Counted from the first letter of the stretch, positions 668 to 62,287 are shown. The stretch is 64,000 nt of DNA from Octopus sinensis (GCF_006345805.1 NC_043006.1:27094001-27158000), one strand, 5' to 3'. Notes: generated by a model from the letters alone, not told the origin. A program made the numbers and translations.

Positions 668-3343
668 GAGGGAGGAGGAGCTACAGACGTTGGACATAGA
701 AGGTAGCTGGAAATTCCTACGGGACAGCTTGCTGAGTGCCACAGACCAAGTCTGTGGATGGTGCAAAGTCCCTTCCAGACCTAGAGTTACGTGGTGGTAG
801 ATAGTGCCATTAGTGCAAAGAAACAGGCCTGGAAAGCCTGGAGGGATGGGGGTAGCAGGGAACTGTACCAAGTAGCTAAAAGGGAGGCTGGGCGGCAGGT
901 ATATAGCCAAAGATGTAGCAGAAAAGAAGAAGTTTGCCAATGTCCAGCGACGTGAGGACCAAAGAACTGAGGTATTTCGGATTGCTAGACAGTGTGTGAG
1001 AGAAAATAGTGATGTTACAGGAGAGAAATGTGTTCGCATGGATGATGGGGCACTTGCTTTTAATGTTGGTGAAAAGAAAGAGGCTTGGAGAAGCCATTAT
1101 GAAAGACTGCTGAATGTGGAGAATGAATGGGAGGAGGAGAGCCTGCCAAATGTTGACCCAGTAGAGGGACAAGCTATCCGAATAGACAGCTCCCTTGTAG
1201 TTAAGGCAATTAAGGGTATGAAACCAGGTAAAGCCCCCGGCCCATCAGGAATCACGGCTGAGATGCTTAAAACAGCTGGTTATGTGGGCTATGGCCTAGT
1301 CACCCGCATTGTAAACCAGGTAGTTCATAATGGAGTCATACCCAATGACTGGTGTAGCAGCACCAAGTCAACTGCTACAAGGGTAAGGGTGATGCTCTAG
1401 ACAGAAATAACTACAGGGGTATTAAACTGTTGGATCAGGTGATGAAGGTCACACAGAGGGTCATAACCCATCTCATTAGGTAGAGAATTTGCTTAGATGA
1501 GTTCGGTTTTGTGCCGGGTAGAAGCACCACTGATGCTATATTCCTGGTCCGACAACTGCAGGAGAAGTACCTAGCTAAAGATAAACCCCTCTACATAGCT
1601 TTTGTGGACTTGGAGAAAGCCTTTGACAGGGTCCCCCGATCCCTTATCTGGTGGTCGATGCGGAAACTGGAGATTGACGAATGGCTAATAAGGGCTGTAC
1701 AGGCCTTATACAGAGAGGCTGTCAGCAAGGTGAGGATTGGCAACGAATATAGTGAAGAATTCCGGGTAGAAGTAGGTGTAGACCAAGGTTCAGCCCTCAG
1801 TCCCCTTTTATTCCTCATAGTCCTCCAGGCAATAATAGAGGAATTCAAAACAGGTTGCCCCTGGGAGCTCCTCTATGCTGATGACCTGGCCCTCATAGCA
1901 GAATCATTACCGGAACTAGAAAAGAAATTTCGGGTGTGGAAGCAAGGGTTAGAATCAAAGGGCCTTAGAGTAAATGTAGCAAAGACCAAAGTTATAGTAA
2001 GCAGAAAGGCGAACTCAGCACACACCCCAAAGGGCAGGTGGCCCTGCTTGATCTGTAGGAAAGACGTAGGTAGAAACTCCATAAGATGCACCCAGTGTAA
2101 GCTATGGACGCATAAGAGGTGCAGCAACATCAAAGGGAAATTAACTGATAAGATAACTTTCATGTGCGGCAGATGCACAGGGACAATAGACACCACAAAT
2201 ACTCAGAAAACAGATTCCATCACACTCCAGGAGGAGAAACTATAAGTAGTCACTAGTTTCTGCTACCTGGGTGACCAAGTTAGTAGTGGAGGTGGATGCT
2301 CAGAGAGTGTCACCACTAGAATACGAATAGCCTGGGCAAAGTTTAGAAAGCTCCTACCCCTACTGGCGACAAAGGGTCTCTCACTCAGAGTGAAGGGTAG
2401 ATTGTATGATGCATGTGTGCGAACTGCCATGCTTCACGGTAGTGAAACATGGGCTGTGACTGCAGAGGACATGTGTAGACTTGAAAAAAATGAAGCTAGC
2501 ATGATCCGCTGGATGTGTAATGTCAGTGTGCACGCACGACAGAGTATAAGCACTCTGAGAGAAATGCTGGACATAAGAAGCATCAAATGTGGTGTGCAAG
2601 ACCGACGCTTGCGATGGTATGGTCATGTACTGCAGATGGATGAGGAGAGATGTGTGAAGTGCCGCTCCCAAACAGTTGAAGGAATCAGGGGGAGAGGTAG
2701 ACCCAGGAAGACATGGGATGAGGTAGTCAAGCATGACCTCAGAGCGTTGGGCCTCACTGAGGCAATGGCGAAGGACCGAGATCTCTGGAGATATGCTGTG
2801 ACTGCAAAGACCCGGGCTGCTTCCTGTACCAGTTCCGCATAGCCCCTGCCCATTCAAAGTACCTTGGATCCCAGAACATCCCGCTGTGCTTGAGGAGACC
2901 TGTTGAGTCAAGTACATGAACATCGAAATAAATATCAATGGAAATAGTAGTTGTGATACCTGTGCCGGTGGCACATAAAAAGCACCATCCGAACGTGGCC
3001 GTTGCCAGTGCCGCCTCGACTGGCTTCTGGGCCGGTGGCACATAAAAAGCACCATTTGAACGTGGTCGATGCCAGCGCCGCCTTGGCTGGCTTCCGTGCC
3101 GGTGGCACGTTAAAAGCACCAACCGATCGTGGCCGATACTAGACTCCCCTGGCGCCTGTGCCGGTGGCACGTAAAAAGCACCCACTACACTCGCGGAGTG
3201 GTTGGCGTTAGGAAGGGCATCCAGCCGTAGAAACACTGGCAGATCAGACTGGAGCCTGGTGCAGCCCCTGGCTTCCCAGACCCCGGTCGAACCGTCCAAC
3301 CCGTGCTAGCGAGGAAAACGGACGTTAAACGATGATGATGATG
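668..3343 (+). mobile_element. RTE-clade LINE, 5'-truncated and decayed
   Basis: ORF pieces 996-1400, 1511-2245 and 2390-2842 contain RT motifs (FVDLEKAFDRV, QGSALSP, LYADD). The 3' UTR has tandem repeats and a (GAT)n tail; there are stops and frameshifts. Confidence 0.95.
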
Positions 3344-3424
3344 ATATATATAAAACTCAACATAAAATATTTATATCTTCTTCATGATCTGCTGGAGTGT
3401 CCACTTCGTGATATATTCACTCAC

Positions 3425-3969: not shown

Positions 3970-4034
3970 ATGAGCCAGCAAAAGATTCAGAAAATTCTAA
4001 ACAGTATGAAGAAGAATATGGACTGTCCAATTTG
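3970..4034 (+). CDS. BRCA1: BRCA1 coding exon 1 (start; RING C1-C2)
   Basis: ATG 3970 reads MSQQKIQKILNSMKKNMDCPI-C, matching human VQNVINAMQKILECPIC. Donor TG|GTGAG at 4035, phase 2, the same intron position as human. Confidence 0.95.
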
Positions 4035-7659: not shown

Positions 7660-9470
7660 ATCATCATCATTTAACGTCCGTTGTCCATGCTGGCATGGGT
7701 TGGATGGTTTGACCAAGGCTGGTAAGCCAGAAGGCTGCACCAGACTCCATTCTGATTTGGCATGGTTTTCTACAACTGGGTGCCCTTCCTAATGCCAACC
7801 ACTCTGAGAGTGTAATGGGTGCTTTTACATGCCACTGACTTGAGTACCATTTGCATGACACTGGTATCTACCACGACTGCGATTTTCCTCAGCTTGATGG
7901 GTCTTTGTCTCAAGCATGACGTAATGCCCTGGTCATTTCCTCCGTGAGGCCCAACACTCGAAAGGAACTCAGCCATTTTGCCTCTGTGAGGTCCAACACT
8001 TGAAAGGAACTTGGCTTGATGGGTCTTTGTCTCAAGCATGACATAATGCCCTGGTCATTACCTCTGTGAGGCCCAACACTCAAAAGGAACTCAGCCACTT
8101 TACCTTTATGAAGCTGAATGCTTGAATGGAACTCAGCCACTTTGCCTTCGTGAGACCCAATTCTTGAATGGTGCTCTTTACAAGCCACCGGGATGGGTGC
8201 CAGTTACGCGACACCAACATCAGCTATGACTACAGTTTCACTTGGCTTGATGAGTCTTCTCAAGTACAGTATATCGCCAAAAGTCTCGGTCACTAGTCAT
8301 TGCCTCTGTGAGGCTCAAAGTTCAAAGATCATGCTTCACCACTTTGTGCCATGTTTTCCTAGGTCTACCTCTACCACAGGTTTCCTCCGTAGTTAGAGAT
8401 CGGCACTTCTTTACACAGCAGTCCTTGTCCATATGTATCACGTGACCATACCAGTGCATACTCTTGCACACCACATCTGATTCCTCTTATGCCTAACTTT
8501 TCTCTCAAGTTGCTTACACTCTGTCGAAGCATACTGGCTTCATTTCTTTCAAGCCCACACATGTCCTTGACTGTCACAGCCTGTGTTTTACTGCCATGTA
8601 GCATGGCTGTTCACACACAGGCATCATATAATGTCTTTCACTCTGAGAAAGAGTCCCTTTGTTGCCAGCAAAAGTAGGAGCTCTCTGAACTTTGCCAAGC
8701 CTAATCTTATCCTCATAGCTACGCTCTTGGAGCATCCACCTCCACTACTTACTTGGTCATCTAGATAACAGAAGCTATAAGCTACTTTTAGCTTGCACCC
8801 CTGGCAGTTGATGGAATCTATTTTCTGTACATTTTCAGCGTTTATTGTACCTGTGCATCTTCCACATTCAAAAGCTAGTTTCCCTGTTAACCTTGCCACA
8901 CCTATTATGTGTCCAAAGCTCGCATCTTATGGAGTTTCTACCTATGTCTTTTCTACAGATCAAGCAGATCAAGATTTGTCTGCCTTCCTACTTATTAAGA
9001 CTTTGGTTTTTTTGCTAGATTAACTCTAAGGCCCTTCGATTTTAGACCTTGCTTCCATACTTGGAACTTCTAGTTCTGGTAGTGATTGAGCTATAAGAGC
9101 AAAGTCATCAGAATAGAGGAGCTCCCAGGGGTAACTTGTCATAAATTCCTGTTATTGCCTGGTGGACTATGATGAACAAAGAGAGGTGTGAGCATCGATT
9201 CTTGGTGAACCCCTACTTGTACTGGGAATTCTTTGCTGTACTCATTGCCAGCCTTCACCTTACTTGTAGCATCCCTGTACATAGCTTGTACAGCTCTCAC
9301 CAACCACTTGTCTATCCCTAGTTTCCACATTGATCACCAGATAAGGGATCTGGTGAAAGGCTTTCTCCAACTCAATAAAGGCCAAGTGCAGAGGTTTATC
9401 TTTGGCTATGTATTTCTCCTGCAGCTGTCTTACCAGAAATATAGCATCAGTGGTGCTTCTCCCTGGCACA
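7660..9470 (-). mobile_element. RTE LINE copy (decayed) with internally duplicated 3' UTR
   Basis: Minus ORFs 9260-9469 (PGRSTTDAIFLVRQLQEK), 9139-9330, 8624-8899 and 8371-8604. Tail catcatcat at 7660; repeated aggcccaacactcgaaaggaact units at 7890-8170. Confidence 0.9.
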
Positions 9471-10511: not shown

Positions 10512-10565
10512 TTTGGATTTAATGACCAACCCAGTTTCTACAACATGTAATCATCACTTCTGCAA
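10512..10565 (+). CDS. BRCA1: BRCA1 coding exon 2 (RING)
   Basis: ttttag|T...AA|gtaagt, 54 nt, (C)LDLMTNPVSTTCNHHFC(K) versus human LELIKEPVSTKCDHIFCK. Same length as human exon 3. Confidence 0.96.
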
Positions 10566-10657
10566 GTAAGTATTATGCCTTTTAATGATCATTTCTTGAC
10601 ACTCATATAAAATCTGAATATATCTTTAATAAAGAATTTATTTGCTGTATCCTTGTC

Positions 10658-10704
<47 letters not shown>

Positions 10705-10705
10705 C

Positions 10706-11113
10706 ATGGGTGACCTGCTGTGCTTGAGGAGACCTATTGCGTCAAGTACATCAACATCGACATCAAAAATCAAATGGAAATTGTAGTTGTGATACCTGTG
10801 CCGGTGGCATGTAAAAAGCACCATCCGAACGTGGCCAATGCCAGCGCCGCCTTGACTGGCTTCCGTGCTTGTGACACGTAAAAAGCACAAACCAATCGTG
10901 GATGTTGCCAGCCTCCCCTGACAACTGTGCCGGTGGCACGTAAAAAGCATCCACTACACTCATGGAGTGGTTGGCTTTAGGAAGGGCATCCAGCTGTAGA
11001 AACACTGCCAGATCAGACTAGAGCTTGGTGCAGCCTCCTGGCTTCCCAGACCCCGGTCGAACTGTCCAACCCATGCTAGCATGGAAAACAGACGTTAAAC
11101 AATGATGATGATG
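10706..11113 (+). mobile_element. RTE 3'-tail fragment (short non-autonomous copy)
   Basis: Matches 2880-3343 and ends in atgatgatgatg. Confidence 0.9.
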
Positions 11114-11190
11114 ATATATATATGTATGTATAAAACTTACTTGGAAGAAGATGCGTGGCGTTCAATCATATAATAATATAAGTAATATAT

Positions 11191-11455
11191 CATCATCATC
11201 ATCATCATCGTTTAACGTCCGTTTTTCGCGCTAGCACGGGTTGGACGGTTCGACCGGGGTCTGGGGAGCCAGGGGCTGCCCCAGGCTCCAGTCTGATCTG
11301 GCAGTGTTTCTACAGCTGGATGCCCTTCCTAACGTCAACCACTCCGCGAGTGTAGTGGGTGCTTTTTACGTGCCACCTGCACAGGTGCCAGAAGAGTCTG
11401 GCATCGGCCACGATCGGTTGGTGCTTTTTTTATGTGCTACCGGCACACAAAAAAC
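11191..11455 (-). mobile_element. RTE 3'-tail fragment
   Basis: Reverse complement of 3160-3343. Confidence 0.9.
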
Positions 11456-11540
11456 TTAATTCTACTCTTGGGTGCTATAAAAGAAACAATGGTGTTTAGT
11501 GGTTATTATTAAGGTTATATGTCATTCAATGTGTGTATAT

Positions 11541-11688
11541 AAGAAAAAGAGGACAAAGGAATAAATGCATATCTTATGAACTTCATTAGCTTACGGCTGT
11601 TTCCACTCTAAGATGTGGTGGACTTATAGTTGAGAGCTAAATGAAGTGCATAAGATAATCATTTATTCCTCTGTCATCTCTTTTCTTA
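11541..11688. repeat. Imperfect inverted repeat, about 50-bp arms with 43-nt core
   Basis: aagaaaaagaggacaaaggaataaatgcatatcttatgaacttcattagct versus the reverse complement of 11635-11688. Confidence 0.8.
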
Positions 11689-12440
11689 TTGCTGCCCTGT
11701 ACTTGACTAATGCTTTGTTTAGAGGCATACATATATTGAGTTCTACACCAGGTTATTAGTATTGCAATGCCTAAGTGACATATATATATTTCATTTAGGC
11801 ATTATGATACTAATAACCTAATACATATATATACATATATATATAGTGTTTACATGAGTAGAGACATTTGTAAGTCATTAACCCTTTTGCAATCAGATTG
11901 CAAATATATATACATTTATACATATATATATGTACATACTTATACCATGTGAGCAAGGAAGGAGGAGTGACAGTAATAGGCAAGAATAGTGGGAGAAGAG
12001 GAAGTAAAAGAATAAGAGAGAGAAAGAAAGAAAAACGAAAGAGTAAAAAGATCATATAGAGTGCGCATCAGAATTGTTAAGATAAAACTTACTTGGAAGA
12101 GGATGCATAGCATTCAATCATATAATCTTATTAAACTTCTAATACTTTTTGATAGTTTATAAAAAAAAATAAATAAATAAATATGAAAATATAAAAAAAA
12201 AAATAAAATAAAAAAATAAATAATTAAATAAAATATAAAAAAATATATATATTTGTAATTTATAAGTTTAAATTATTAATTTAAATAATTTTTAAAAATT
12301 TTAACTTTAATTTAAATATTTTAATTGGATTTTTATATTTTATATTTTTTATATATTTTTTAATTAATTTTATTGGCTTATGTATTGGCTTATGATTTTC
12401 ACTGTTTGATTTGCCTAATAGTGGTTTTATCTCTAATTTA

Positions 12441-12481
<41 letters not shown>

Positions 12482-12560
12482 GAGTGTAGAAATTCGGGGT
12501 GAGTACTTGATAATTATAAGCACCTGTGTATACCGTTTGGTGGTGTAGGTGGTGGAGTAA

Positions 12561-15455
12561 ATTGATCAAAATAAAAATAAAAATAAAAACATGAGGCGAA
12601 GGATTCAGCGGTACATATGTTTCGGGCCTTTATTAGACAGATTCATAACAAATCATAATGTATGTCTGTGGCCTTCTTCAGCCGCGCACAACAGCTTCCA
12701 CAAGGACATGTGTTACTTCCGAAATTCTTGGTTGGGGATGCAAATCTTCTCGTTCCCGTACGACATAATGCGGCAGCAGCATCGATTGAATCGTCCATCT
12801 CCTTCTTCTCTCAGTGTAGAATGAGAAAACTTGGATGTTGAGGTAATGTAAATAAATAATACGTATATAGAGGTGAAGATGGAGGGGCGAGAGTTCGGGA
12901 TGAGGGATAAAAATATAAAATAATATAAAATAATATAAAAATGTAGAGGATAAAGATATAAAGAGTTGTAAGGAGATGTAAAGGGGGTATAAAGAAATAT
13001 AAAGAAATATAAATAAATGTAAAGGCATAATGTTGTAAAGTAAAAATAGAAATGGAAATAATAGTAAAAGAAGTAAAAGAACCTGATAAAAACATGATAA
13101 AAGTGTAAAAGAATGTAAAGATAAGGGATGTATAGAGGTCGCGGACCCAGCATGGTGGTCAGGAGATTGATAAAACCTAGTTGTAGAACTGTCAGTAAAT
13201 TAACGGTTTCGTCGTAAATCAGAGCTGATGAGAGTTTAATCTGGTTCCTTGAATTAAATGGACTTCCAGTACATACATATCATCATGGGTACATACACCC
13301 ACATACACGCGTACATATACGTCTCCAAGTCTATAAGCAAACACACGCACTCGCGTGTAACACGTACATAAACACACACGCACCCACACGCCACACGCGC
13401 ACACACACGCACATACAACAGAATATCCGCATATATAGACGGACATTACGCGCGTACACGCTCACATGTATATACGCGCGCCCCTCACTACATACGTACA
13501 CGTATATGCCCACGTCTCTAGGTCTAGGTATAAGATATTAAGGATGTGTATAAGAACGTATGTAAAGAATCCGTACTCATGTTAATACGCGCACGCACAC
13601 ACGGCTGTGTGTCCGTATGTGCGTGCACATATATATATCACATACACACACAGAGACACACGCGCCCATGGGTTAGTCATAAGATATCGAAGTATGCATG
13701 TACATATACGCCGCGCATATGTATGTATGCGCATACACACGTACGCGGACGCTCGGATACTCAAAAGGCGGATCCATAGGTAAGTAATAAACATATATAG
13801 AGGTGTAAAGCGATAAATTAGGGGTAAGAATGAGGGTAAGGGTAAAGATTAGAAATAAAAAATACAGTATAAATAAGAAAATACAATGTAATAGTTAGAA
13901 ATGAAATATAAGAATTATAAGGGTTATAAGAGTTAAGGTAAGGGATGAAAATGAAAATGAGAGTAAATGGCAGTAGAATAAACGTAAAAATAAAAGTAAA
14001 AATAAATTAAAAATAAAAATAAATGGAAGTAGGATAAAAGTAAAAATAAAAATGAAAATAAAAATAAAAATAAAATAAAATAAAATAAAATAAAATAAAA
14101 TATAAAATAAAAAAATAAGGTAAAAATATAATTTTGTAAAGTTTAACATGAGATGGAGGTGGCCCACCATATATATATATATATATATGTGTATATGTAC
14201 ACACACATACACGGTGGTGCACATACATACGCACACACACACACACACACACACATACACACTCACATATAGGAAAACGGGATGTGCTGGAGCCGACAGG
14301 TTGCACCGGGTGGGAGGAAATAGCATGGGGAGTTGGTATAAGACCTAAGCATTGTAGTATTTGAAAGTATTAATAAGTTTATGTATACAGGATGGTTTGA
14401 ACGCTGACCTTTTGTTAATAAGATTGTGTTTGTCTTTGAATTTCAAGATGTTCAGGAGTTCTACACAGCATAGTTGGCATCCTGCTCTATTATTTAAATA
14501 AGGTGCAGCTGATCCGATGATGGACCATCTGAGTTTGAAGCTTATGCATTTGTCTTTTAATTCCCAAATTCTTTTAGAGAGGGAGGTGCTGTTAGCCTTA
14601 TGTCTATGTCTCAGCGAGGGACCGGTGGTTGTAGTAGTATCTTTCCAGGAGGTTGAGCAACCAATATAGGTGAGTGTGTTAAATTGAGTACTCACCTCAC
14701 ATGAGTATATTACGTTTTTCGCCCTGCATGCGCCCTGCAACGGGCACTCTGATGCACATCTGCAGTTGCATTGCATTGCATTATTCGGTCGTGTGCTGCT
14801 AATCCTAGGCGGAGGTGTTGCAATACGAGTGGGGGCGTTGTTATCCTCCTGGTTGTTGATGGGTGTAGTGTTTCCTCTGTTGTGTTGGCGGGGTGTTATT
14901 ACTAGCTGCTTGGGTATTATGGTTGCCAGTCTGGTTATAATGCCTACTGTCTAGATGAGGGGGGTCTGTTGTTCGCTATGGTTTGCTCTTGATCTAGCTG
15001 TTCTAATATTAATATAGTGTGTTTAGCTAAGAGGCAGCTCATGTTGGGCAGGGTAGAGTAGGAAATCCTAATAGTTTTGTTGGAGAAGATACTTCTATAT
15101 TTGGGGTGGGTGGGAAGTTGGAAATTATAGAGAATATTCTTTTACATAACCTACCCCTAACTGCTAAGTTGAAAGGTATGTTGAACCATATGTATTTGCG
15201 TATCTACTATTATCCCTTCTATTTCTCCTAATAGGATCTATATTGTTCCCGTCGGGAGGGTTACTATTGTGTGCTGTTCTATTAGTTCGCCTATTTCCTA
15301 TACGTTGTTTGGAGTTTGAATTAGACTTATCGTAGTGTGAGTTGAGTGCTGAGTTCGATTATAATTGGGAGTCTTATGGTCGACGGACGCTCCCGGTTGG
15401 TCTGCATATGATATTCTCTGGTTATATCCGGCACTATAGAGAGCTTGGTTGTAGT
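12561..15455 (-). mobile_element. Penelope-like element, 3' part (linker, GIY-YIG endonuclease, long 3' UTR)
   Basis: ORF 14345-14776 CNCR..CPLQGAC..NVIY...YIG...NSTSLSKRIWELK...CQLC. Upstream remnants IWFNIPFN...IFSNKTIRISYSTLPNM and YNQALYSAGY are typical of PLE ORFs. Confidence 0.9.
12608..12685 (-). ncRNA. Type I hammerhead ribozyme (antisense to BRCA1)
   Basis: Mirror copy: GCGG-CTGAAGA-AGGCC...GGCCC-GAAA-CATATG-TA-CCGC on the minus strand. Confidence 0.85.
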
Positions 15456-15458
15456 GTT

Positions 15459-17506
15459 CCGGTCCTCGCTGAGACATAGACATAAGGCTAACAGCACCTC
15501 CCTCTCTAAAAGAATTTGGGAATTAAAAGACAAATGCATAAGCTTCAAACTCAGATGGTCCATCATCGGATCAGCTGCACCTTATTTAAATAATAGAGCA
15601 GGATGCCAACTATGCTGTGTAGAACTCCTGAACATTCAAAGACAAACACAATCTTATTAACAAAAGGTCAGAGTTCAAACCATCCTGTATACATAAACTT
15701 ATTAATACTTTCAAATACTACAATGCTTAGGTCTTATACCAACTCCCCCATGCTATTTCCTCCCACCCGGTGCAACCTGTCGGCTCCAGCACATCCCGTT
15801 TTCCTATATGTGAGTGTGTATGTGTGTGTGTGTGTGTGTGTGTGCGTGTGTATGTGCACACACGTGTATGTGTGTGTACATATACACATATATATATATA
15901 TATATATATGTGGGCCACCTCCATCTCATGTTAAACTTTACAAAATTATATTTTTACCTTATTTTTTTATTTTTATATTTTATTATTTTATTTTATTTTA
16001 TTTTTATTTTTATTTTCATTTTTATTTTTACTTTTATCCTACTTCCATTTATTTTTATTTTTAATTTTATTTTTACTTTTATTTTTACGTTTATTCTACT
16101 GCCATTTACTCTCATTTTCATTTTCATCCCTTACCTTAACTCTTATAACCCTTATAATTCTTATATTTCATTTCTAACTATTACATTGTATTTCTTATTT
16201 ATACTGTATTTTTATTTCTAATCTTTACCCTTACCCTCATTCTTACCCCTAATTTATCGCTTTACACCTCTATATATGTTTATTTACTTACCTATGGATC
16301 CGCCTTTTGAGTATCCGAGCGTCCGCGTACGTGTGTATGCGCATACATACATATGCGCGCGTATATGTACATGCATACTTCGATATCTTATGACTATACC
16401 CATGGGCGCGTGTGTCTCTGTGTGTGTATGTGAATATATATATGTGCACGCACATACGGACACACAGCCGTGTGTGCGTGCGCGTATTAACATGAGTACG
16501 GGATTCTTTACATACGTTCTATACACATCCTTTAATATCTTATACCTAGACCTAGAGACGTGGGCATATACGTGTACGTATGTAGTGAGGGGCGCGCGTA
16601 TATACATGTGAGCGTGTACGCGCGTAATGTCCGGTATATATGCGGATATTCTGTTTGTTGTGTGCGTGTGTGTGTGCGCGTGTGCGTGTGGGGCGTGTGT
16701 GTGTTTATGTACGTGTTACACGCGAGTGCGTGGTTTGCTTATAGACTTGGAGACGTATATGTACGCGTGTATGTGGGTGTATGTACCCATGATGATATGT
16801 ATGTACTGGAAGTCCATTTAATTCAAGGAACCAGATTAAACTCTCATCAGCTCTGATTTACGACGAAACCGTTAATTTACTGACAGTTCTACAACTAGGT
16901 TTTATCAATCTCCTGACCACCATGCTGGGTCCGCGACCTCTATACATCCCTTATCTTTACATTCTTTTACACTTTATCATGTTTTTATCAGGTTCTTTTA
17001 CTTCTTTTACTATTATTTCCATTTCTATTTTTACTTTACAACATTATGCCTTTACATTTTTTTATTTCTTTATATTTCTTTTACCCCCTTTACATCTCCT
17101 TACAACTCTTTATATCTTTATCCTCTACATTTATATTATTTTATATTATTTTATATTTTTATCCCTCATCCCGAACTCTCGCCCCTCCATCTTCACCTCT
17201 ATACGTATTTATTTATTTACATTACCTCAACATCCAAGTTTTCTCATTCTACACTGAGAGAAGAAGGAGATGGACGATTCAATTCGATGCTGCTGCCGCA
17301 TTATGTCGTACGGGAACGAGAAGATTTGCATCCCCAACAAGAATTTCGGAAGTAACACATGTCCTTGTGGAAGCTGTTGTGCGCGGCTGAAGAAGGCCAC
17401 AGACATACATTATGATTTGTTATGAATCTGTCTAATAAAGCCCGAAACATATGTACCGCTGAATCCTTCGCCTCATGTTTTTATTTTTATTTTTATTTTG
17501 ATCAAT
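15459..17506 (+). mobile_element. Second, shorter Penelope-like copy inverted relative to 12561-14625
   Basis: Near-identical reverse complement. ORF 15445-15660 repeats the GIY-YIG C-terminus (8-nt deletion near 15634). Confidence 0.9.
17383..17459 (+). ncRNA. Type I hammerhead ribozyme (sense to BRCA1)
   Basis: GCGG-CTGAAGA-stem II (AGGC..GCCC, extended by ACAGA/TCTGT and CATA/TATG)-GAAA-CATATG-TA-CCGC. GUA cleavage triplet; cut predicted after 17455. Confidence 0.85.
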
Positions 17507-17533
17507 ATATTATATATATATATTATATATATA

Positions 17534-17582
<49 letters not shown>

Positions 17583-17775
17583 CACACATACGTTTATGTA
17601 CATACATCTATACATATATGCATATGTGGGCACAGGACGTCATGAAACGTGTACAACAAAAAAATACAAAGTACGAGTATAAAGAATATGAACTATTTTT
17701 TTCGAACAATGAAAGACACAAATGGAAAACAAGACAAACAACATAAAGAAAGACCCTTCTTTATATATGTATATA

Positions 17776-18729
17776 TCATCATCATCATCGTTTAACGTCC
17801 GTTCTCCATGCTAGCATGGGTTGGACGGTTCGACCGGGGATCTGGGAAGCCAGAAGGCTGCACCAGGCTCCAGTCTTATCTGGCAATGTTTCTACAGCTG
17901 GATGCCCTTCCTAACGCCAACCACTCCGTGAGTGTAGTGGGTGCTTTTTACGTGACACCTGCACAGGTGCCAGGCGAGGCTGGCAACGGCCACGGTCAGA
18001 TTGGTGTATTTTATGTGCCACCGGCACGGAAGCCAGTGGAGGCGGCGCTGGCATCGGCCACGAGTCGGATAGTGCTTTTTACGTACCACCAGACCAGGGA
18101 TCCTGGCTGGTTCAATTCGATTTCGATTTCGCTTGCCCCAACATGTCTTCGCAAGCAAAGGGGGTTGGCATGGGTGCCTGTCGTCGGATGAGGTTCTATA
18201 TCGACTTCGCTTGCCTCAACAGGTCTTTGTGTCCAAGGGAGGAAAGGCATTCATAAGTGGGCTGGGCTCACTTGTCCTGCCTGGTCTTCTCACGTACAGC
18301 ATATTTCCAAAGGTCTCGGTCGCTGGTCATTTCCTCAGTGAGGCCTAAAGTTCAAAGGTCGTGCTTCACCACCTCGTCCCAGGTTTTCCTGGGTCTACCT
18401 CTTCCACGGGTTCCCTCAACTGCTAGGGATTGGCACTTTCTCACACACCTAACTTCATCCATTCTCGCCACATGACCATACCAGAGCAATCGTCTCTCTT
18501 GCACACCACAACTGATGCTTCTTAGGTACAACATTTCTCTCAAGGTACTAACGCTCTGTCGAGTATGTACACTGACATTACACATCCATCGGAGCATACT
18601 GGCTTCATTCCTCACGAGCTTACGCATGTCCTCAGCAGTCACGGCCCATGTTTCACTGCCATGTAGCATGGCTGTTCGTACACATGCATCATACAGTCTG
18701 CCTTTTACTCTGAGCGAGAGGCCTTTAGT
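17776..18729 (-). mobile_element. RTE LINE 3' portion
   Basis: Minus ORF 18352-18732 matches the C-terminus of the 31940 ORF, followed by the 3' UTR repeats and tail. Truncated at a microsatellite. Confidence 0.92.
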
Positions 18730-18733
18730 CACA

Positions 18734-18746
18734 ATATATATACATG

Positions 18747-18791
<45 letters not shown>

Positions 18792-19090
18792 ATATATATA
18801 TGTATGTGTATATATATATGTATGTGTATATATATATGTATATGTATATATATATGTATGTATATGTATATACACATGTATGTATATATGTATGTGTATA
18901 TATCTATATATGCATGTGTGTGTATATATATATGCATGTATGTATATATGTATGTGTATATATCTATATATGCATGTGTGTGTATATATATATGCATGTA
19001 TATATATATGCATGTATATATATGTATGTGTATATATCTATATATGCATGTGTGTGTATATATATATATGCATGTATATATATATGTATG

Positions 19091-19130
<40 letters not shown>

Positions 19131-19155
19131 AGTATGTATATATATATATGTATGT

Positions 19156-19191
<36 letters not shown>

Positions 19192-19218
19192 GTATATATA
19201 TATGTATGTATATGTATA
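18734..19218. repeat. Compound (TA)/(TG) microsatellite
   Basis: Seen directly. Confidence 0.98.
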
Positions 19219-19508
19219 TCACGTGATCACGTGACCATCAGATGCTTTACACATCGCTGGTCACAATGCGTTCGCATTGTTTTAGCCTTCGAATGACGCC
19301 ACCCCGCTGGCTAAGCGAGCAGGCCAACAGAAGAGTGAGAGAAAGAGTGGTGAAAGAGTACAGCAGGGATCACCACCCCCTGCCGGAGCCTCGTGGAGCT
19401 TTTAGGTGTTTTTGCTCAATAAACACTCACAACGCCCGGTCTGGGAATTGAAACCGCGATCCTACGATCGCGAGTCCGCTGCCCTAACCACTAGGCCATT
19501 GCGCCTCC
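19219..19508 (-). mobile_element. tRNA-derived SINE
   Basis: Minus head GGAGGCGCAATGGCCTAGTGG...GGTTTCAATTCC with A and B boxes. Confidence 0.85.
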
Positions 19509-19509
19509 G

Positions 19510-19996
19510 TATATGTATATATATATGTGTGTGTATATATATATATGTATGTAATAATATATATATGTATATTTATATATATGTATATATATATGTATAT
19601 ATATATGTATATATATATGTATATATATATGTATATATATATGTATATATATATATGTATATATGTCTATATATATATGTATTTATATATATATATGTAT
19701 TTATATATGTATATGTATTTATATATATATATGTATTTATATATGTATATGTATTTATATATATGTATATATATATATATGTATATATGTATATGTATTT
19801 ATATATATGTATATATGTATATGTATTTATATATATGTATATATATATATATGTATATATGTATATGTATTTATATATATGTGTATATGTATTTATATAT
19901 ATGTATATATGTATATGTATTTATATATATGTATATATGTATATGTATTTATATATATGTATATATGTATATGTATTTATATATATGTATATATAT

Positions 19997-20027
<31 letters not shown>

Positions 20028-21385
20028 TTATATATATGTATGTATATATGTATATGTATTTATATATATGTATATATATATATGTATTTATATATATGTA
20101 TATATATATATGTATTTATATATATGTATATATTTATATATATGTATATATATATTATATATATATATATTATATATGTATATATGTATATGTATATATA
20201 TATTATATATGTATATATGTATATGTATATATATATGTATATATGTATATATGTATATGTATATATATATGTATATATGTATATGTATATATATATGTAT
20301 ATATATATGTATATATGTATATGTATATATAATATATTATATATGTATATATATATGTATATATGTATATATGTATATATATATATATATATTATATATA
20401 TGTATATATATATATATATATTATATATGTATATATATATGTATATATATATGTATATATATATGTATATATTATGTATATATATATGTATATATATATA
20501 ATATATATATGTATATTATATATGTATATATGTGTATATATATATGTATATATGTGTATATATATATGTATATATATGTATATATATATGTATATATATA
20601 TGTATATATATATGTATTTATATATATGTATTTATATATATGTATATGTATATATATATGTATATGTATATATATATGTATATATATATGTATTTATATA
20701 TATGTATATGTATATATATTGTATATATATGTGTATATATATGTGTATATATATGTGTATATATATATGTATTTATATATATGTATTTATATATATGTAT
20801 ATATATATATATGTATATATGTGTATATATATGTGTGTATATATATATGTATGTGTGTATATATATATGTATGTGTGTATATATGTATGTATGTGTGTAT
20901 ATATATATGTATGTGTGTATATATGTATGTATGTGTGTATATATGTATGTATGTATGTATATATGTATGTATATATGTATATATGTCTATATATATATGT
21001 ATATATGTCTATACATATATGTATGTATATATATCTATATATATATGTATATATGTCTATACATATATGTATGTATATATATCTATACATATATGTATGT
21101 ATATATGTCTATACATATATGTATGTATATATGTCTATACATATATGTATGTATATATGTCTATATGTATATGTATTTATATATATATGTATATATATGT
21201 ATATGTATTATATATATGTTTTATATGTATATGTATTTATATATATATGTATATATATGTATATGTATTTATATATATATGTATATATATGTATATGTAT
21301 TTATATATATATGTATATATATGTATATCTGTGTATATATATATGTTTATATACGTATATTTGTGTATATATATGTACATATATG
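19510..21385. repeat. About 1.9 kb compound (TA)n/(ATGT)n microsatellite
   Basis: Seen directly. It generates the spurious Y/I/M/C ORFs. Confidence 0.98.
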
Positions 21386-21386
21386 T

Positions 21387-21500
21387 GGAGGCGCTGTGGC
21401 CCAGTTCTTAGGGCAGCGGACTCACAGTCGTAGGATCGCGGTTTCGATTCCCAGACCGGGTGTTGTGAGTGTTTATTGAGCGAAAACACCTAAAGCTCCA
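21387..21500 (+). mobile_element. Truncated copy of the same tRNA-SINE family
   Basis: ggaggcgctgtggcc...ggtttcgattcccagaccggg is the reverse complement of 19393-19508. Confidence 0.85.
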
Positions 21501-21503
21501 CTA

Positions 21504-22660
21504 AAACTAACTCTATGGCTGCGATATATTGATGACACCTTCATACTCTGGCCCCACCAGTAAGATGTCCAAGTGCTGTTAGATCATGTGAACTCAATAA
21601 AACCATCCATACAGTTCACAATGAAAAAAGAAAATGACAATCAGCTAGCATACCTGGACGTAATAATAACATGCACCAAGTATGAATTCAGGACATCCAT
21701 ATACTGAATGATACCTCAACTTCAACTGACACCTTTGGTCCTCTGGATACTAATACCTCTCATACATACACACACACACATAAACATATATACATACACA
21801 TATACATATATACACACATAAACATATATATATACACATACACACACACACATAAACATATATACATACACATATACATATATACACACATAAACATATA
21901 TATATACACATACACACACACACACATATATACACATATGCATATATACATACACATATACATATGTACAAACACATATACATAATAACACGCACCAAGT
22001 AAGGATTCAGGAAATTCGTATACCGCAAGATGTCAGTATACTGGACGTTACCTCAGCTTCAACTCCCATCATCCATACAGTGTAAAGAGAGGGATTGCTC
22101 AGTGCCTAACCCACCACGAAGAAATGATCAAGCTCACTAACAATCTATTAAGCAACAATTACCCCAAAAGCATATTCTCCACTCCAATTATGAAGAAAAG
22201 AGAGGATGAACCTTCTGTCTACCCTATGTGAAAGGCCTCTCTGAAAAGATACAAAAGATATGTGGCCCATATGACATCAGGACAGTATTCAAAAATAATA
22301 CAACACTTCGCAAATATCTCCTTCAAGTAAAACCACCAGTAGAAGAGAATATGACCAAAGACTGTGTACTCCATCCCATGCAGCTGTGGTAGGTTATACA
22401 AAGGTGAAGCATGCTGCCCCCTCAAAATAAGGGTAGAGGAACATCACAAAGCTGTGACACGGGGGGGGGGAGATATTGATAAATTGGGTATAGCTGATCA
22501 TGTATGGTAAAATGGAGACCACGTCCCCCTGTGGGATGAAGTTAAAATAATAGACAGAGAGCACATATGCTAGGACACAACAACCTCCTAAGCAGACCAA
22601 GTGCAGATATGAACAGCATATGGGAACCGGTATTAAGGAAGGATAGGAGACTATTAGATT
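21504..22660 (+). mobile_element. Decayed Penelope-like element (RT and GIY-YIG remnants)
   Basis: LWLRYIDDTFILWPH...IQFTMKKENDNQLAYLDV from about 21515; LPYVKGLSEKI...DCVYSIPCSCGRLYKGE from about 22217. Interrupted by a microsatellite. Confidence 0.85.
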
Positions 22661-22694
22661 TATAAGCCCTAAAATTCACTCCATAATTGCTCAT

Positions 22695-22945
22695 GGGCAT
22701 ATGGCGTAGTGGTTAAGAACACTGGCTACTAACCTGAAGATTCCAAGTTTGATTCCAGGCAGTGACCTAATAATAATAATAATAATAATGATAATAATAA
22801 CAACATCGAAAAATACCTTAGGAATGAGAAACCAGGTTTGAAATTTCCCCAAGACACCTGATGAAGGCTGGAGGGTATATCAGCAGAAACGTGTTAACAA
22901 CAAACAAGATGAGGACAAATATCTGTCAATGTAAATAATGTATAT
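22695..22945 (+). mobile_element. tRNA-headed SINE with a hammerhead-like motif
   Basis: A box TGGCGTAGTGG, B box GTTTGATTCC, (AAT)n, then ACAC-CTGATGA-AGGCTG..CAGCA-GAAAC-GTGT at 22854-22894. Confidence 0.75.
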
Positions 22946-23278
22946 TAAATCTCACTGAAGATATCTTCCTTGCTAATGAAGAATTTCCAACTTGTTTTTG
23001 TATATCTTAATAAAAAATCGAAATGCCAATGATAGTTCATGTGATATATTATTTAAAAATAATTGGTGAAGATGCTTGTTTCTTTTCATTCTGTGTCTTT
23101 ACACTTCACCAGAAAAACTTTATTTTATGAGGCCTGACTACAGTTAAAAGTGATGAATGTGATTAAAGAATGTGATTCAAAGTAATCCAAACAGTTTTCT
23201 GTAACATACTGATGCTGCTACTCCTACTACTTCTTTTGATTGTCTCTTTATTGTTTTCTTTATATTGTATTTTCATAG

Positions 23279-23353
23279 ATTTTGCATCAATGAATTTATT
23301 CACAAGAAAAGAAAAGTACCTTGTCCAATGTGTAATGTTGCTTTAACAAAGAG
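23279..23353 (+). CDS. BRCA1: BRCA1 coding exon 3 (RING)
   Basis: tttcatag|A...AG|gtaaat, 75 nt, FCINEFIHKKRKVPCPMCNVALTK(R). Completes the C3HC4 RING. Confidence 0.96.
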
Positions 23354-25221: not shown

Positions 25222-25307
25222 AAGTTTTCAAGAAAATGGTAAACTGAAAAACATCATTGAGAAACTGAAGAATCTGATGTCTGCTGTGGCAAAAGATACA
25301 CATACAC
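25222..25307 (+). CDS. BRCA1: BRCA1 coding exon 4 (post-RING helix of the BARD1 interface)
   Basis: caatag|A...C|gtaaga, 86 nt, SFQENGKLKNIIEKLKNLMSAVAKDTHT versus human [28 protein letters not shown]. Confidence 0.93.
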
Positions 25308-29610: not shown

Positions 29611-30202
29611 ATTTGTTCTTATTATATGCTAAGACAGTTTTCTTGGAAGCATTCTTTCAGTACTGTTTATTTTCAATTTCCTTAACTAGAATATCCTATG
29701 TGTTTCAATTCCAATGTAAGTGAATATAGACTGGTTTCATAAGTCACATGTAACTTCTTGTTTATTGGTATATTGAAAGTGTTGTTTGGAACCCAACATG
29801 AAGGTTCTAACAAAAATCTGTAACAGAACTTTTTGAGTATGGGTAAATACAGTAAAATTTAAAATTATTTAAATTTTGTTTATTATCATTATATAAAATC
29901 AGTTACTAGTCAATATTTATTTGGAATAAATAACAGGTTTGTAGTAAATGACTCCAATGAAGAACATTGCACATTATTGGATTTTCAATTAAACTTAATG
30001 CATTTTCAACAGGTACACAAAGAAGTAAAAATAACACAAAATAGTTATATGTGTATGAATTTATTTCAAAATGAAATACATTCTCCTACAAAAATATACT
30101 CACAAATAGTGATAAAAAGATCCACTAAAATAATTCAAGAATTCACTACTCACTTTACAGGAAATTAAAAATTGGAAATGGAATAAATTTGAAAATAATA
30201 AT

Positions 30203-30882
30203 CATCATTATCATTTAACGTCCGCTTTCCATGCTAGCATGGGTTGGACGGTTCAACTGGGGTCTGGGAAGCCAGAAGGCTGCACCAGGCCCAGTCTGAT
30301 CTGGCAGTGTTTCTACAGCTGGATGCCCTTCCTAATGCCAACCACTTCGTAAGTGTAGTGGGTGCTTTTTATGTGCCACCTGCACAGGTGCCAGACGAGG
30401 CTGACAGACGGCCCTGATCGGATGGTGCTTTTTACGTGCCACCGGCACGGGGACCAGACGGAGCTGGCAACGACCACGGTCGGATGGTGCTTTTTACGTG
30501 CCACCGGCACGGTAGCCAGTCGGGCAGCGCTGGCTACGGCCACGTTTGGATAGTTCTCTTACGTACCATCGGCACTGGTATCACAGCTACAAATTCCATT
30601 GATGTTGATAGATTACGATTTTGATTTTGATTTTCACTTGCCTCAACAGGTCTTCACAAGTGGAGTTTTGTGTCCCAAGAAGGAAAGGAATGCATAAGTG
30701 GGCTGGCTACATCCCAGGTGTAGGCCACGGGATTATGGCCTCACTTGTCCTGCCGGGTCTTCTCACGCACAGCATGCTTCCATAGGTCTCGGTCTCGTAG
30801 TCATTTCCTCGGTGACACCTAAAGTTTGAAGGTTGTGCTTCACCACCTTGTCCCAGGTTTTCCTGGGTCTACCTCTTCCACA
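30203..30882 (-). mobile_element. RTE LINE 3' end
   Basis: Tail, GGCACGTAAAAAGCAC repeats and the GRGRPRKTWDKVVKH coding remnant. Confidence 0.9.
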
Positions 30883-62162: not shown

Positions 62163-62287
62163 TATCTCCACAGGTGCGTTACTGTGATCGTACACTGAAA
62201 TATTTTCAGGGAATTGCCCATAAATGTTGGGTTGTATCTTTCCAATGGATAGAGCAATCTATGAAGAGTGAGATACCATTAAAAGAG
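62163..62287 (+). CDS. BRCA1: BRCA1 coding exon 17 (BRCT1 core)
   Basis: tgtttag|TA...GAG|gtagta. [22 protein letters not shown] versus human [22 protein letters not shown]. Confidence 0.95.

What the first reader, a model, noticed from the sequence alone, without database searches (positions are those of the whole stretch)
12561..17506. 5-kb ribozyme-capped fold-back inside BRCA1 intron 2
Seen: two near-identical PLE 3' regions (12561-14625 and 15459-17506) in outward-pointing inverted orientation around an 833-bp spacer of upstream PLE sequence. Each arm ends in a canonical hammerhead about 45 nt from its outer end. Known: PLE insertions often have inverted, truncated partner copies and carry hammerheads. 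Inference: the BRCA1 pre-mRNA would form a duplex of about 2 kb, a strong ADAR/Dicer substrate and a cruciform-prone fragile site in a DNA-repair gene. High arm identity implies a recent, possibly polymorphic, insertion.
Basis: partly seen in the sequence, partly recalled or inferred. Interest (0 to 1): 0.8.

Follow-up and report, generated by a model that had tools for sequence, protein, structure and literature searches.

The report
Inverted retrotransposon pair in BRCA1 intron
Two truncated copies of one Penelope-like retrotransposon (Hydra clade) sit head-to-head inside an intron of a BRCA1-like gene, probably in a cephalopod; this is a real but textbook insertion layout for these elements, and its proposed effects on BRCA1 are untested.

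Summary
Arms 12561-14625 and 15459-17506 are inverted and 97.07% identical around an 833-bp spacer. On the minus strand, the spacer plus left arm encode the frameshifted C-terminal third of a Penelope-like element (PLE) ORF. It ends in a GIY-YIG endonuclease with the Hydra-clade signature (CxCX5C linker, CxxC-E, N-CxH). The right arm is a shorter 5'-truncated copy that starts inside that endonuclease.

Each arm carries a complete type-I hammerhead core with a palindromic helix III, cleaving 51 nt from the outer end. Rfam misses it. An explicit descriptor finds only these two sites in the window (0.07 expected by chance), and Argonauta hians relatives carry the same unusual architecture in their pseudo-LTRs. 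Both arms end at the family's TTTGATC terminus, and the right arm abuts (TA)n, the clade's known target.

The host gene is BRCA1-like, with RING exons, a large exon and BRCT exons colinear on the plus strand. The insert lies in the second coding intron.

An inverted 5'-truncated partner copy is a documented PLE hallmark, so this is a new member of a known kind. The dsRNA, ADAR, Dicer and fragile-site consequences are inference only. Arm differences are unusually indel-rich, so read-level confirmation is needed.

The parts
12561..14625 (-). Left arm: the 3' part of PLE copy A. It holds the endonuclease C-terminal two-thirds, the stop codon at 14345-14347, a ~1.78-kb low-complexity 3' UTR, the hammerhead and the 3' terminus ...TTTTGATCAATT.
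   Evidence: 97.07% inverted match to 15459-17509. tblastn to P0029 EN at E 6e-23. The 3' terminus resembles the Argonauta relative's ...TTTGATCC|(TA)n.
14626..15458 (-). Spacer: the unique upstream part of copy A. It covers the post-RT region, the N-rich linker, the CxCX5C motif and the start of the GIY-YIG domain. It is 5'-truncated at 15458, roughly aa 285 of a ~630-aa ORF, and has at least 3 frame changes.
   Evidence: Three-frame translation. tblastn places P0029 aa 270-434 on 15507-14989 at E 7e-5. Conserved strings YNQALYSAGYN, IWFNIPFNL and KTIRISYSTLPN match the consensus of alignment A1.
15459..17506 (+). Right arm: PLE copy B, 5'-truncated inside the endonuclease at about residue 50 of the 143-aa ORF. 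The rest is the 3' UTR, hammerhead and 3' terminus. It lacks 8 bp (ATCTTGAA) that are present in the left arm at 14435-14442, which shifts the EN frame.
14345..14776 (-). 143-aa ORF: the Hydra-clade PLE linker plus GIY-YIG endonuclease domain (CNCRCASEC ... VIY ... YIG ... CQLC..E ... N ... CIH).
   Evidence: 2978 HMMER relatives. Alignments A1 and A2. AlphaFold pLDDT 90. Foldseek's top hits are the I-TevI catalytic domain and T4 EndoII.
17383..17459 (+). Hammerhead motif of the right arm, in the sense of the host gene. Helix I is GCGG/CCGC, followed by CUGAAGA and a long helix II, then GAAAC-AUAU-GUA with cleavage after 17455. A 1-nt G deletion weakens helix II.
   Evidence: Descriptor scan. 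The HHR-constrained fold is 3.0 kcal/mol above the MFE.
12608..12685 (-). Hammerhead motif of the left arm, antisense to the host gene. Cleavage is after 12612 reading on the minus strand. Helix II is GGCC/GGCC plus ACAGA/UCUGU.
   Evidence: Descriptor scan. The unconstrained MFE of the 86-nt motif equals the hammerhead fold, and a homodimer through the palindrome ACAUAUGU is predicted at -43.0 against 2 x -15.6 kcal/mol.
15459..15462 (.). CCGG palindrome at the head-to-head junction, also present at 14622-14625. It is a candidate 4-nt microhomology that joined the two cDNAs.
   Evidence: Junction sequences printed. The joining role is inferred.
12480..12560 (.). 81 bp of unique sequence between the left (TA)n tract and the left arm end. 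It is either a PLE 'tail' extension or original target DNA.
   Evidence: No other match in the window. [quoted passage not shown] Unresolved.
17507..17570 (.). (TA)n tract directly abutting the right arm. A second (TA)n tract lies at 12444-12479. (TA)n is the preferred target of Hydra-clade PLEs.
   Evidence: Sequence. Target preference in PMC8557442 section 11.
10512..10565 (+). BRCA1-like coding exon 2 (54 nt, LDLMTNPVSTTCNHHFCK) with AG/GTAAGT splice sites. It is the upstream boundary of the host intron 10566-23278. The next exon is 23279-23353.

Best explanation
This is a single insertion of a Hydra-clade Penelope-like retrotransposon into or next to a (TA)n tract in the second coding intron of a BRCA1-like gene, probably in a coleoid cephalopod.

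The element's GIY-YIG endonuclease cut both DNA strands, and each 3'-OH primed reverse transcription near the 3' end of element RNA. One cDNA (the plus strand, 12561->15458) reached about two-thirds of the way into the ORF. The other (the minus strand, 17506->15459) stopped inside the endonuclease region. The two antisense cDNAs were then joined 3' end to 3' end, plausibly through the palindromic CCGG at the junction, and each was filled in on the other. The product is two 5'-truncated copies lying head to head with their 3' ends outward.

The hammerhead near each outer end is the family's normal pseudo-LTR ribozyme, of the type that needs two copies to pair through a palindromic helix III. 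It is not a feature of this locus. The copies are dead: they are truncated, there is no RT, and the frames are shifted.

Shown: the repeat, the PLE and Hydra identity, the hammerhead motif and its conservation in relatives, the element terminus, the (TA)n flank and the BRCA1 context. Inferred: priming on both strands, CCGG-mediated joining, one event rather than two, and any effect on BRCA1 RNA.
For: - The repeat is real and unique in the window.
- The ORF crosses the left arm/spacer boundary, and the right arm begins inside the same ORF.
- Hydra-clade definers from PMC8557442 section 11 are met. The CxCX5C linker, CxxC before E, CxH after N and the lack of a CxxC between GIY and YIG are seen in this ORF. 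RWK, DKT and YRDD are seen in full-length relatives.
- The predicted fold best matches GIY-YIG nucleases.
- The hammerhead descriptor gives 2 hits, both in the arms, against a shuffle mean of 0.07 per window.
- Argonauta hians relative L002 has the same CUGAAGA-A / long helix II / GAAAC-4-nt loop-GUA motif in both pseudo-LTRs, 3754 bp apart and about 60-70 nt from a ...TTTGATCC|(TA)n terminus. L003 has a compact version.
- Both arms stop at the same element terminus but have different flanks.
- The 5' ends abut with no intervening target DNA.
- Literature: an inverted 5'-truncated copy adjacent to a PLE is common (PMC8557442). A purified PLE protein cleaves and extends both DNA strands in vitro (PMC11167929).
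Against: - No reads are available, so the join cannot be verified.
- Arm differences are indel-dominated (25 indel events against 30 substitutions, ratio 0.83 against 0.00-0.11 elsewhere). This is atypical of natural divergence and points to local consensus error, which also means the assembly is weakest exactly here.
- No target-site duplication can be read, and only the right arm abuts (TA)n directly.
- The 81 bp on the left is unexplained.
- A 10-mer, TGGTTGTAGT, abuts both spacer ends in direct orientation (P about 6e-5). The two-cDNA model does not account for it.
- No full-length copy of this exact family was found: the word-index search returned nothing and the best relative is 44% identical.
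Confidence: 0.82

Rival explanations
1. Assembly artefact. The genome holds a single 5'-truncated PLE copy, and a chimeric or fold-back long read, or a mis-join, created the second inverted arm.
For: The arm differences are mostly 1-nt indels. 13 of the 21 single-base indels in the alignment lie in runs of 2 nt or less, and the indel/substitution ratio is about 8 times that of other repeat pairs. That looks like unpolished consensus. PLE tandem/inverted structures are known to trouble assemblies (PMC8557442).
Against: - A missed-adapter fold-back gives a spacer-less palindrome, whereas here 833 unique bp separate the arms.
- The right arm stops exactly at the element's own 3' terminus and continues into a different flank that carries on colinearly to the next BRCA1 exons.
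- The arms differ by 8-, 6- and 4-bp indels.
- Elsewhere the assembly keeps 1.7-2.4-kb ORFs intact.
Confidence: 0.07
2. Later inverted duplication. A single truncated PLE copy was partly duplicated in inverted orientation by a replication template switch (fold-back or MMBIR-type), not by retrotransposition.
For: There is short palindromic microhomology (CCGG) at the junction, and an unexplained 10-mer lies at both spacer ends. Both are the kind of scar seen at replication-based rearrangements (my knowledge).
Against: The duplicated segment ends precisely at the element terminus and next to (TA)n rather than at an arbitrary point, and no flanking host DNA is co-duplicated. The PLE literature already explains this layout.
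Confidence: 0.05
3. Two independent insertions of the same PLE family into one (TA)n tract in opposite orientations.
For: Hydra-clade elements target (TA)n, and (TA)n lies on both sides.
Against: The 5' ends abut directly with no residual (TA)n or other target DNA between them. The second insertion would have had to land exactly at the first copy's truncated 5' end. The arms are near-identical.
Confidence: 0.04
4. A foldback-type DNA transposon with ~2-kb terminal inverted repeats.
For: The arms are long, rich in simple repeats, and surround a short middle segment.
Against: The repeat boundary falls inside a retroelement endonuclease ORF that reads outward. The arms end in a PLE hammerhead and PLE terminus. 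There is no transposase.
Confidence: 0.01

Closest known systems
Hydra-clade Penelope-like elements (Craig et al. 2021, PMC8557442)
   Same: It has a C-terminal GIY-YIG EN with a CxCX5C linker, no CCHH, CxxC/CxH around the conserved E and N, a hammerhead, and insertion at (TA)n. The clade is already reported from Mollusca.
   Different: This copy is truncated and frameshifted. Its sub-lineage, shared with Argonauta hians elements, has a long 3' UTR: 1.78 kb here and about 1.16 kb in L002, whose unit length is 3.75 kb. The clade was described as generally under 3 kb. The hammerhead also has a greatly extended helix II and a non-G-C 10.1/11.1 pair.
Complex tandem/inverted PLE insertions (Penelope, Poseidon, Neptune, Naiad)
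   Same: An inverted 5'-truncated copy abuts the 5' end of another copy and forms flanking inverted repeats. One end may carry a 'tail'.
   Different: There is no full-length copy and no direct pseudo-LTR here. Both members are truncated, so the whole insert is a bare fold-back.
PLE / metazoan type-I hammerheads acting as dimers (Cervera and de la Pena 2014, PMC4209133)
   Same: It has a complete catalytic core, a short helix I (4 bp), an odd nucleotide at the 5' base of stem II, and a 2-bp helix III capped by a palindromic 4-nt loop. A homodimer with an 8-bp intermolecular helix III is predicted.
   Different: Helix II carries a ~45-nt insert that includes an AAUAAA. Rfam models do not detect the motif, and activity is untested.
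L1 twin priming inversions (Ostertag and Kazazian 2001; from my knowledge)
   Same: Both nicked target strands prime cDNA synthesis, and the two cDNAs are joined through microhomology.
   Different: In twin priming the second primer anneals internally, so the product is one element with its 5' part inverted. Here both cDNAs start at the RNA 3' end, giving two overlapping copies with both 3' ends outward.
Intronic inverted repeat pairs (for example inverted Alus) as ADAR substrates; intronic hammerheads of amniotes (from my knowledge)
   Same: An intronic inverted repeat can fold into long dsRNA in the pre-mRNA, and a sense-strand hammerhead sits in an intron.
   Different: There is no evidence of transcription, editing or cleavage here. 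The arms are far longer (2 kb) and are separated by 833 nt.

Membership tests
Penelope-like element, Hydra clade | C-terminal GIY-YIG endonuclease domain | tested here: met
   The GIY/YIG-type motifs (VIY ... YIG), R47, H51, E106 and N121 are conserved across 59 relatives. The domain is C-terminal in RT-bearing relatives. The AlphaFold model (pLDDT 90) best matches I-TevI and T4 EndoII, although with weak E-values of 0.39-0.89. Pfam GIY-YIG did not hit this ORF and gave only a sub-threshold hit on relative P0029.
Penelope-like element, Hydra clade | [quoted passage not shown] | tested here: met
   The ORF has CNCRCASEC (C3, C5, C11), CQLC-x2-E (C100, C103, E106) and N121 ... C130-I-H132. There is no CxxC between Y24 and Y37. 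The definition comes from PMC8557442 section 11.
Penelope-like element, Hydra clade | PLE-type RT with a DKT motif (in place of DKG) and an RWK motif | not testable with these tools
   This copy is 5'-truncated downstream of the RT core. Only the post-RT region remains (tblastn E 7e-5). Full-length relatives P0037, P0072 and P0100 show RW(K/Q), DKT/DKS and YRDD.
Penelope-like element, Hydra clade | Hammerhead ribozyme motif in the terminal/pseudo-LTR region | tested here: met
   The descriptor hits only the two arms. The same motif occurs in both pseudo-LTRs of Argonauta L002 and downstream of the ORF in L003.
Penelope-like element, Hydra clade | Insertion into (TA)n | tested here: inconclusive
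   The right arm abuts (TA)n at 17507-17570. On the left, (TA)n at 12444-12479 lies 81 bp from the arm. No empty site is available.
Penelope-like element, Hydra clade | Tandem or inverted 5'-truncated partner copies | tested here: met
   Two 5'-truncated copies lie head to head. The layout is described in PMC8557442.
Hammerhead ribozyme, type I | Conserved core C3 U4 G5 A6 N7 G8 A9 / G12 A13 A14 / A15.1-U16.1 / H17 | tested here: met
   CUGAAGA ... GAAAC AUAU GUA|C is present in both arms.
Hammerhead ribozyme, type I | Three helices around the core, with a G10.1-C11.1 closing pair | tested here: inconclusive
   Helix I is 4 bp. Helix II is 4 bp (left) or 3 bp (right) plus an extension. Helix III is 2 bp. 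Position 10.1/11.1 is A.C here and A.A or A.G in the Argonauta copies. The left copy's MFE is the hammerhead fold, and the right copy's is 3.0 kcal/mol higher. A 106-nt context gave another MFE and z-scores of about -0.1 and -0.3.
Hammerhead ribozyme, type I | Match to curated covariance models (Rfam Hammerhead families) | tested here: not met
   There was no hit at gathering score or at E<=10 in the window, and none at E<=0.1 in six relatives' loci. The models evidently do not cover this PLE variant.
Hammerhead ribozyme, type I | Self-cleavage | not testable with these tools
   This needs in vitro transcription and a cleavage assay, as monomer and as tandem dimer.
BRCA1 (host gene) | N-terminal RING with flanking helices, a large central exon and C-terminal BRCT repeats, colinear on one strand | tested here: met
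   The spliced 93-aa peptide hits the BRCA1 RING (1jm7_A) at E 6e-22 over residues 4-91, against 3.6e-15 for the next family, and Pfam zf-C3HC4. There is an 800-aa ORF at 42780-45182. BRCT hits lie at 62183-62287 (57% identity, E 1e-7) and 63564-63692 (E 2e-5).

The most novel reading that the evidence does not exclude
The insert is young and possibly polymorphic, and it is transcribed within the BRCA1 pre-mRNA of a cephalopod, a lineage with very active ADAR editing. Its 2-kb arms would pair into an exceptionally long intramolecular dsRNA that is hyper-edited or diced. The sense-strand hammerhead, which has an AAUAAA inside its helix II, could cleave or prematurely terminate some transcripts, measurably lowering or altering BRCA1 expression in carriers.

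A secondary reading is that the long-3'-UTR Hydra sub-lineage, with its extended-helix-II hammerhead embedding a poly(A) signal 16 nt upstream of the cleavage site, uses the ribozyme for 3'-end formation.
Probability: 0.06. Interest if true: 0.6.

Novelty: new member of a known kind. Interest (0 to 1): 0.25.

Why it matters
As it stands, this is a clean annotated example of the head-to-head PLE insertion layout. It extends the recently named Hydra clade to a long-3'-UTR sub-lineage in octopod-like genomes, and shows that this sub-lineage's hammerhead escapes Rfam models, which is useful for TE and ribozyme annotation.

The junction has a palindromic CCGG and a 10-mer at both cDNA stop points. 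It is a small natural data point for the unresolved question of how PLEs make inverted copies.

It would matter biologically only if the insert is polymorphic and its dsRNA or ribozyme affects BRCA1 transcripts. Nothing here shows that.

Tried and rejected
- Rfam gave no hammerhead at gathering score, at E<=10 or on relatives at E<=0.1. Because it also misses relatives whose motifs are obvious, I treated the negative as uninformative rather than as evidence of absence.
- RNAfold of a 106-nt context gave no hammerhead fold and z-scores of about -0.1 and -0.3. This was superseded by folding the motif itself.
- Pfam on the EN ORF and on the right-arm ORF found nothing.
- A profile of 59 EN domains against PDB sequences found nothing at E<=1.
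- The word-index protein search with the EN ORF found nothing, so no close family members, consensus or empty site could be obtained.
- The two RVT_1+PHD ORFs at 31940-33688 and 1511-2245 are unrelated to the fold-back.
- The direct repeats flanking the fold-back (11195-11430 and 17775-18012) belong to a common interspersed family with at least 10 copies in the window. They are not part of the structure.
- A relaxed regular expression also flagged 42623-42740 (+). It fails the helix II test of the stricter descriptor and was dismissed as chance.
- I tried to make the 10-mer TGGTTGTAGT pair in two-cDNA annealing, snap-back and copy-choice geometries. None yields the observed inversion, so it is left unexplained (note).
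- There is no ADAR-like A>G bias among the arm substitutions.


Full report
OBSERVATION

BLASTN of the region against the window aligns 14625->12558 with 15459->17509 at 97.07% identity over 2082 columns, and finds no other copy in the 64 kb (ungapped pieces). The unique spacer is 14626-15458, 833 nt.

WHAT THE SEQUENCE IS

On the minus strand a 143-aa ORF (14345-14776) runs from the spacer into the left arm. An exhaustive HMMER search found 2978 relatives (best E 1e-24, 41-44% identity). The match is C-terminal in most of them, including 620-720-aa proteins. Those long proteins carry RT motifs upstream (RW(K/Q), DKT/DKS, F-D-x-FYPSI, YRDD).

The ORF and its relatives share several features:
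- a CNCR-x4-C linker, which is the CxCX5C pattern;
- a GIY...YIG core with no CxxC between the two halves;
- CxxC just before the conserved Glu;
- CxH after the conserved Asn.

These are the features that Craig et al. 2021 use to define the Hydra clade of Penelope-like elements, along with DKT, RWK, hammerheads and (TA)n targets (PMC8557442 section 11).

Pfam did not recognise the domain, and a profile search of PDB sequences found nothing. A confident AlphaFold model (pLDDT 90, beta-beta-alpha-alpha-beta-alpha order) has as its three best Foldseek matches the I-TevI catalytic domain and T4 EndoII, both GIY-YIG nucleases, but at weak E-values.

tblastn with the relative P0029 maps its aa 270-434 to 15507-14989 and aa 452-602 to 14785-14339 on the minus strand. 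It maps aa 509-569 to 15463-15645 on the plus strand. Reading the three frames shows recognisable blocks (YNQALYSAGYN, IWFNIPFNL, KTIRISYSTLPN) in different frames, which means at least three frameshifts in the spacer.

So copy A (12561-15458, minus strand) is a PLE truncated at about residue 285 of a ~630-aa ORF. Copy B (15459-17506, plus strand) is truncated inside the endonuclease. They lie 5' end to 5' end, with their 3' ends outward.

HAMMERHEADS

Rfam reports no hammerhead at gathering score or at E<=10. It also misses the full-length relatives, so that negative carries little weight.

I wrote an explicit type-I descriptor requiring:
- helix I of at least 4 bp;
- CUGANGA;
- helix II of at least 3 bp, with one mismatch or bulge allowed at its base;
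- GAAA;
- a short helix III;
- UH.

It finds exactly two sites in both strands of the window: 17383-17459 (+) and 12685-12608 (-). Dinucleotide shuffles give a mean of 0.07 sites. The descriptor was written after I had seen the motif, so that figure is somewhat favourable.

The motif reads GCGG-CUGAAGA-A-GGCC...(~45 nt)...G(G)CC-C-GAAAC-AUAU-GUA|CCGC. The core is complete. Helix III plus its loop (ACAUAUGU) is a perfect palindrome. The 10.1/11.1 position is A.C rather than G-C.

Independent support comes from relatives:
- The Argonauta hians locus L002 (assembly identified through PMC12682272 and PMC13652810) carries CUGAAGA-A ... ~58 nt ... GAAAC-AUGU-GUA twice, 3754 bp apart, in 98%-identical direct repeats on either side of the ORF. 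These are its pseudo-LTRs.
- A third, different copy nearby in L002 has the same plan.
- L003 has a compact version with the same unpaired A after the core.

This matches the PLE/metazoan hammerheads of Cervera and de la Pena 2014: short helix I, an unpaired base at stem II, helix III of 1-2 bp with a palindromic loop, dimeric action and low activity in vitro (PMC4209133).

Folded alone, the left-arm motif's MFE is the hammerhead fold. The right-arm motif lacks one G in helix II and sits 3.0 kcal/mol above its MFE. Two copies are predicted to dimerise through an 8-bp intermolecular helix III (-43.0 against 2 x -15.6 kcal/mol).

'Canonical' is acceptable in the PLE-literature sense but not in the Rfam sense. 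Catalysis is untested.

ENDS AND TARGET

Both arms stop at the same sequence...TTTTATTTTGATCAAT. The Argonauta relative ends ...TTTCTTTGATCC and is followed directly by (TA)n. Here (TA)n abuts the right arm at 17507-17570. On the left, (TA)n at 12444-12479 is separated from the arm by 81 unique bp. That stretch may be a PLE 'tail', an extension often present at one end only (PMC8557442), or it may be host DNA. No target-site duplication can be read.

JUNCTION

The arms meet the spacer at the palindrome CCGG (14622-14625 and 15459-15462). If the Pro codon preceding EHYNQ in the source element was CCG, both antisense cDNAs would have ended in ...CCGG-3' and could anneal to each other. This is inference.

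The 10-mer TGGTTGTAGT abuts both spacer ends in the same orientation (P about 6e-5 by simulation). I could not fit it to any pairing geometry.

MECHANISM

The best-supported account is a single retrotransposition event. The endonuclease nicked both strands, each 3'-OH primed cDNA near the RNA 3' end, both syntheses aborted, and the two cDNAs were joined by microhomology.

This matches the documented PLE habit of carrying an adjacent inverted 5'-truncated copy. It also matches the in vitro finding that a PLE protein cleaves and extends both strands, unlike R2 or L1 (PMC11167929). It resembles L1 twin priming, except that both primers start at the RNA 3' end.

ARTEFACT QUESTION

Within the arms there are 30 mismatched columns, most of them clustered in microsatellites, and about three are isolated. 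There are 25 indel events, 20 of them 1 nt long. The indel/substitution ratio is 0.83, against 0.00-0.11 for five other repeat or orthologue pairs in the same window. 13 of the 21 single-base indels in the alignment are in runs of 2 nt or less. The spacer's frameshift density, about 3 per 0.8 kb, is similar.

This looks more like local consensus error than evolution, so the true arm identity is probably above 99% and the locus is the least reliable part of the assembly.

Several points argue that the structure is nevertheless genuine:
- A missed-adapter fold-back would have no unique spacer.
- The second arm ends exactly at the element terminus and runs into a distinct flank that continues colinearly to the next exons.
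- The arms differ by 8-, 6- and 4-bp indels.
- Long ORFs elsewhere in the window are intact.

I put the artefact at about 7%. Only reads can close the question.

HOST GENE

Four colinear plus-strand exons encode MSQQKIQKILNSMKKNMDCPIC / LDLMTNPVSTTCNHHFCK / FCINEFIHKKRKVPCPMCNVALTKR / SFQENGKLKNIIEKLKNLMSAVAKDTHT, with AG/GT boundaries. Their coordinates are 3970-4034, 10512-10565, 23279-23353 and 25222-25307.

The spliced peptide matches the BRCA1 RING structure at E 6e-22 over residues 4-91, ahead of TRIM5 at 3.6e-15. An 800-aa ORF at 42780-45182 has a single database relative, 74% identical, from a Logan assembly. BRCT-like exons follow at 62183-62287 and 63564-63692.

The fold-back lies in the 12.7-kb intron 10566-23278, after a 54-nt exon equal in length to human exon 3 (exon sizes from my memory). 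'Intron 2' is correct when counting coding exons.

The window shares a ~100-bp interspersed repeat (80-87% identity, four copies) with an Argonauta locus, and the closest PLE sub-lineage is from Argonauta. A coleoid cephalopod host is therefore likely, but this is inferred.

CONSEQUENCES

The gene is on the plus strand. The right arm and its hammerhead are therefore in sense and the left arm is antisense. A pre-mRNA spanning the intron could fold the arms into a ~2-kb imperfect duplex.

That it does so, or is edited, diced or fragile, is not shown by anything here. The 833-nt spacer and the mismatches reduce cruciform propensity at the DNA level (my knowledge). The single sense hammerhead is of a dimer-dependent type, is the weaker copy in this assembly, and would be buried in the duplex.

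VERDICT

This is a real, well-formed but ordinary PLE insertion: a new member of a known kind.

Noticed in passing
window 14626-14635 and 15446-15455: The 10-mer TGGTTGTAGT abuts both ends of the spacer in the same orientation (simulated P about 6e-5). In the element's sense strand, ACUACAACCA sits at both cDNA stop points. No pairing geometry I tried explains it.
   Followed up: partly
window 17434-17439 (+) and 12627-12632 (-): An AAUAAA hexamer lies inside the hammerhead's extended helix II, 16 nt upstream of the predicted cleavage site. The second Argonauta motif has AAUAAA a few nt after its hammerhead (L002 around 8834). It may or may not be linked to 3'-end formation of the element RNA.
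   Followed up: no
window 12480-12560: 81 bp of unique sequence separate the left (TA)n tract from the left arm, while the right arm touches (TA)n directly. It could be a PLE 'tail' or original target DNA.
   Followed up: partly
window 11037-11273, with copies at 3096-3345, 7660-7835, 17775-18027, 30195-30448, 34272-34516, 56536-56771, 59137-59304 and others: An abundant ~250-bp interspersed repeat family. One copy forms a hairpin (79-nt arms, 90% complementary) that scores sub-threshold against plant miRNA models (MIR810, 68.6 bits against 170). The copies flanking the fold-back are coincidental.
   Followed up: yes
window 31940-33688 (+), 1511-2245 (+), 18267-18700: LINE-like ORFs with RVT_1 followed by a PHD-like Cys cluster. 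18267-18700 is a 90%-identical 3' fragment of the same family (matching 33577-34010). They are unrelated to the PLE.
   Followed up: partly
window 18680-21500: About 3 kb of (TA)n/(TG)n-type microsatellite and AT-rich simple sequence (GC 0.20 at 20001-22000) lies in the same BRCA1 intron. It generates spurious long ORFs and sub-threshold miRNA-model hits.
   Followed up: no
window 42780-45182 (+); L001: The 800-aa central BRCA1-like exon has only one relative among 5.8 billion clustered proteins (P0001, 74% aa identity, from Logan run SRR11869391). L001 aligns at 84% DNA identity over about 3.4 kb of the window. This lineage's BRCA1 is therefore barely represented in protein databases.
   Followed up: partly
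L002 8086-8920 (Argonauta hians BAAFZT010000002.1): Directly downstream of the first element's (TA)n lies a second, different PLE 3' fragment. It has its own long-helix-II hammerhead (8726-8828) and is again followed by (TA)n. This points to repeated PLE insertion into the same microsatellite.
   Followed up: partly
window 12561-14345 / 15740-17506: The element's 1.78-kb 3' UTR is almost entirely low-complexity sequence ((CA)n, (TA)n, (CG)-rich and ATAAA-type repeats). This is unusually long for a clade described as generally under 3 kb in total.
   Followed up: no
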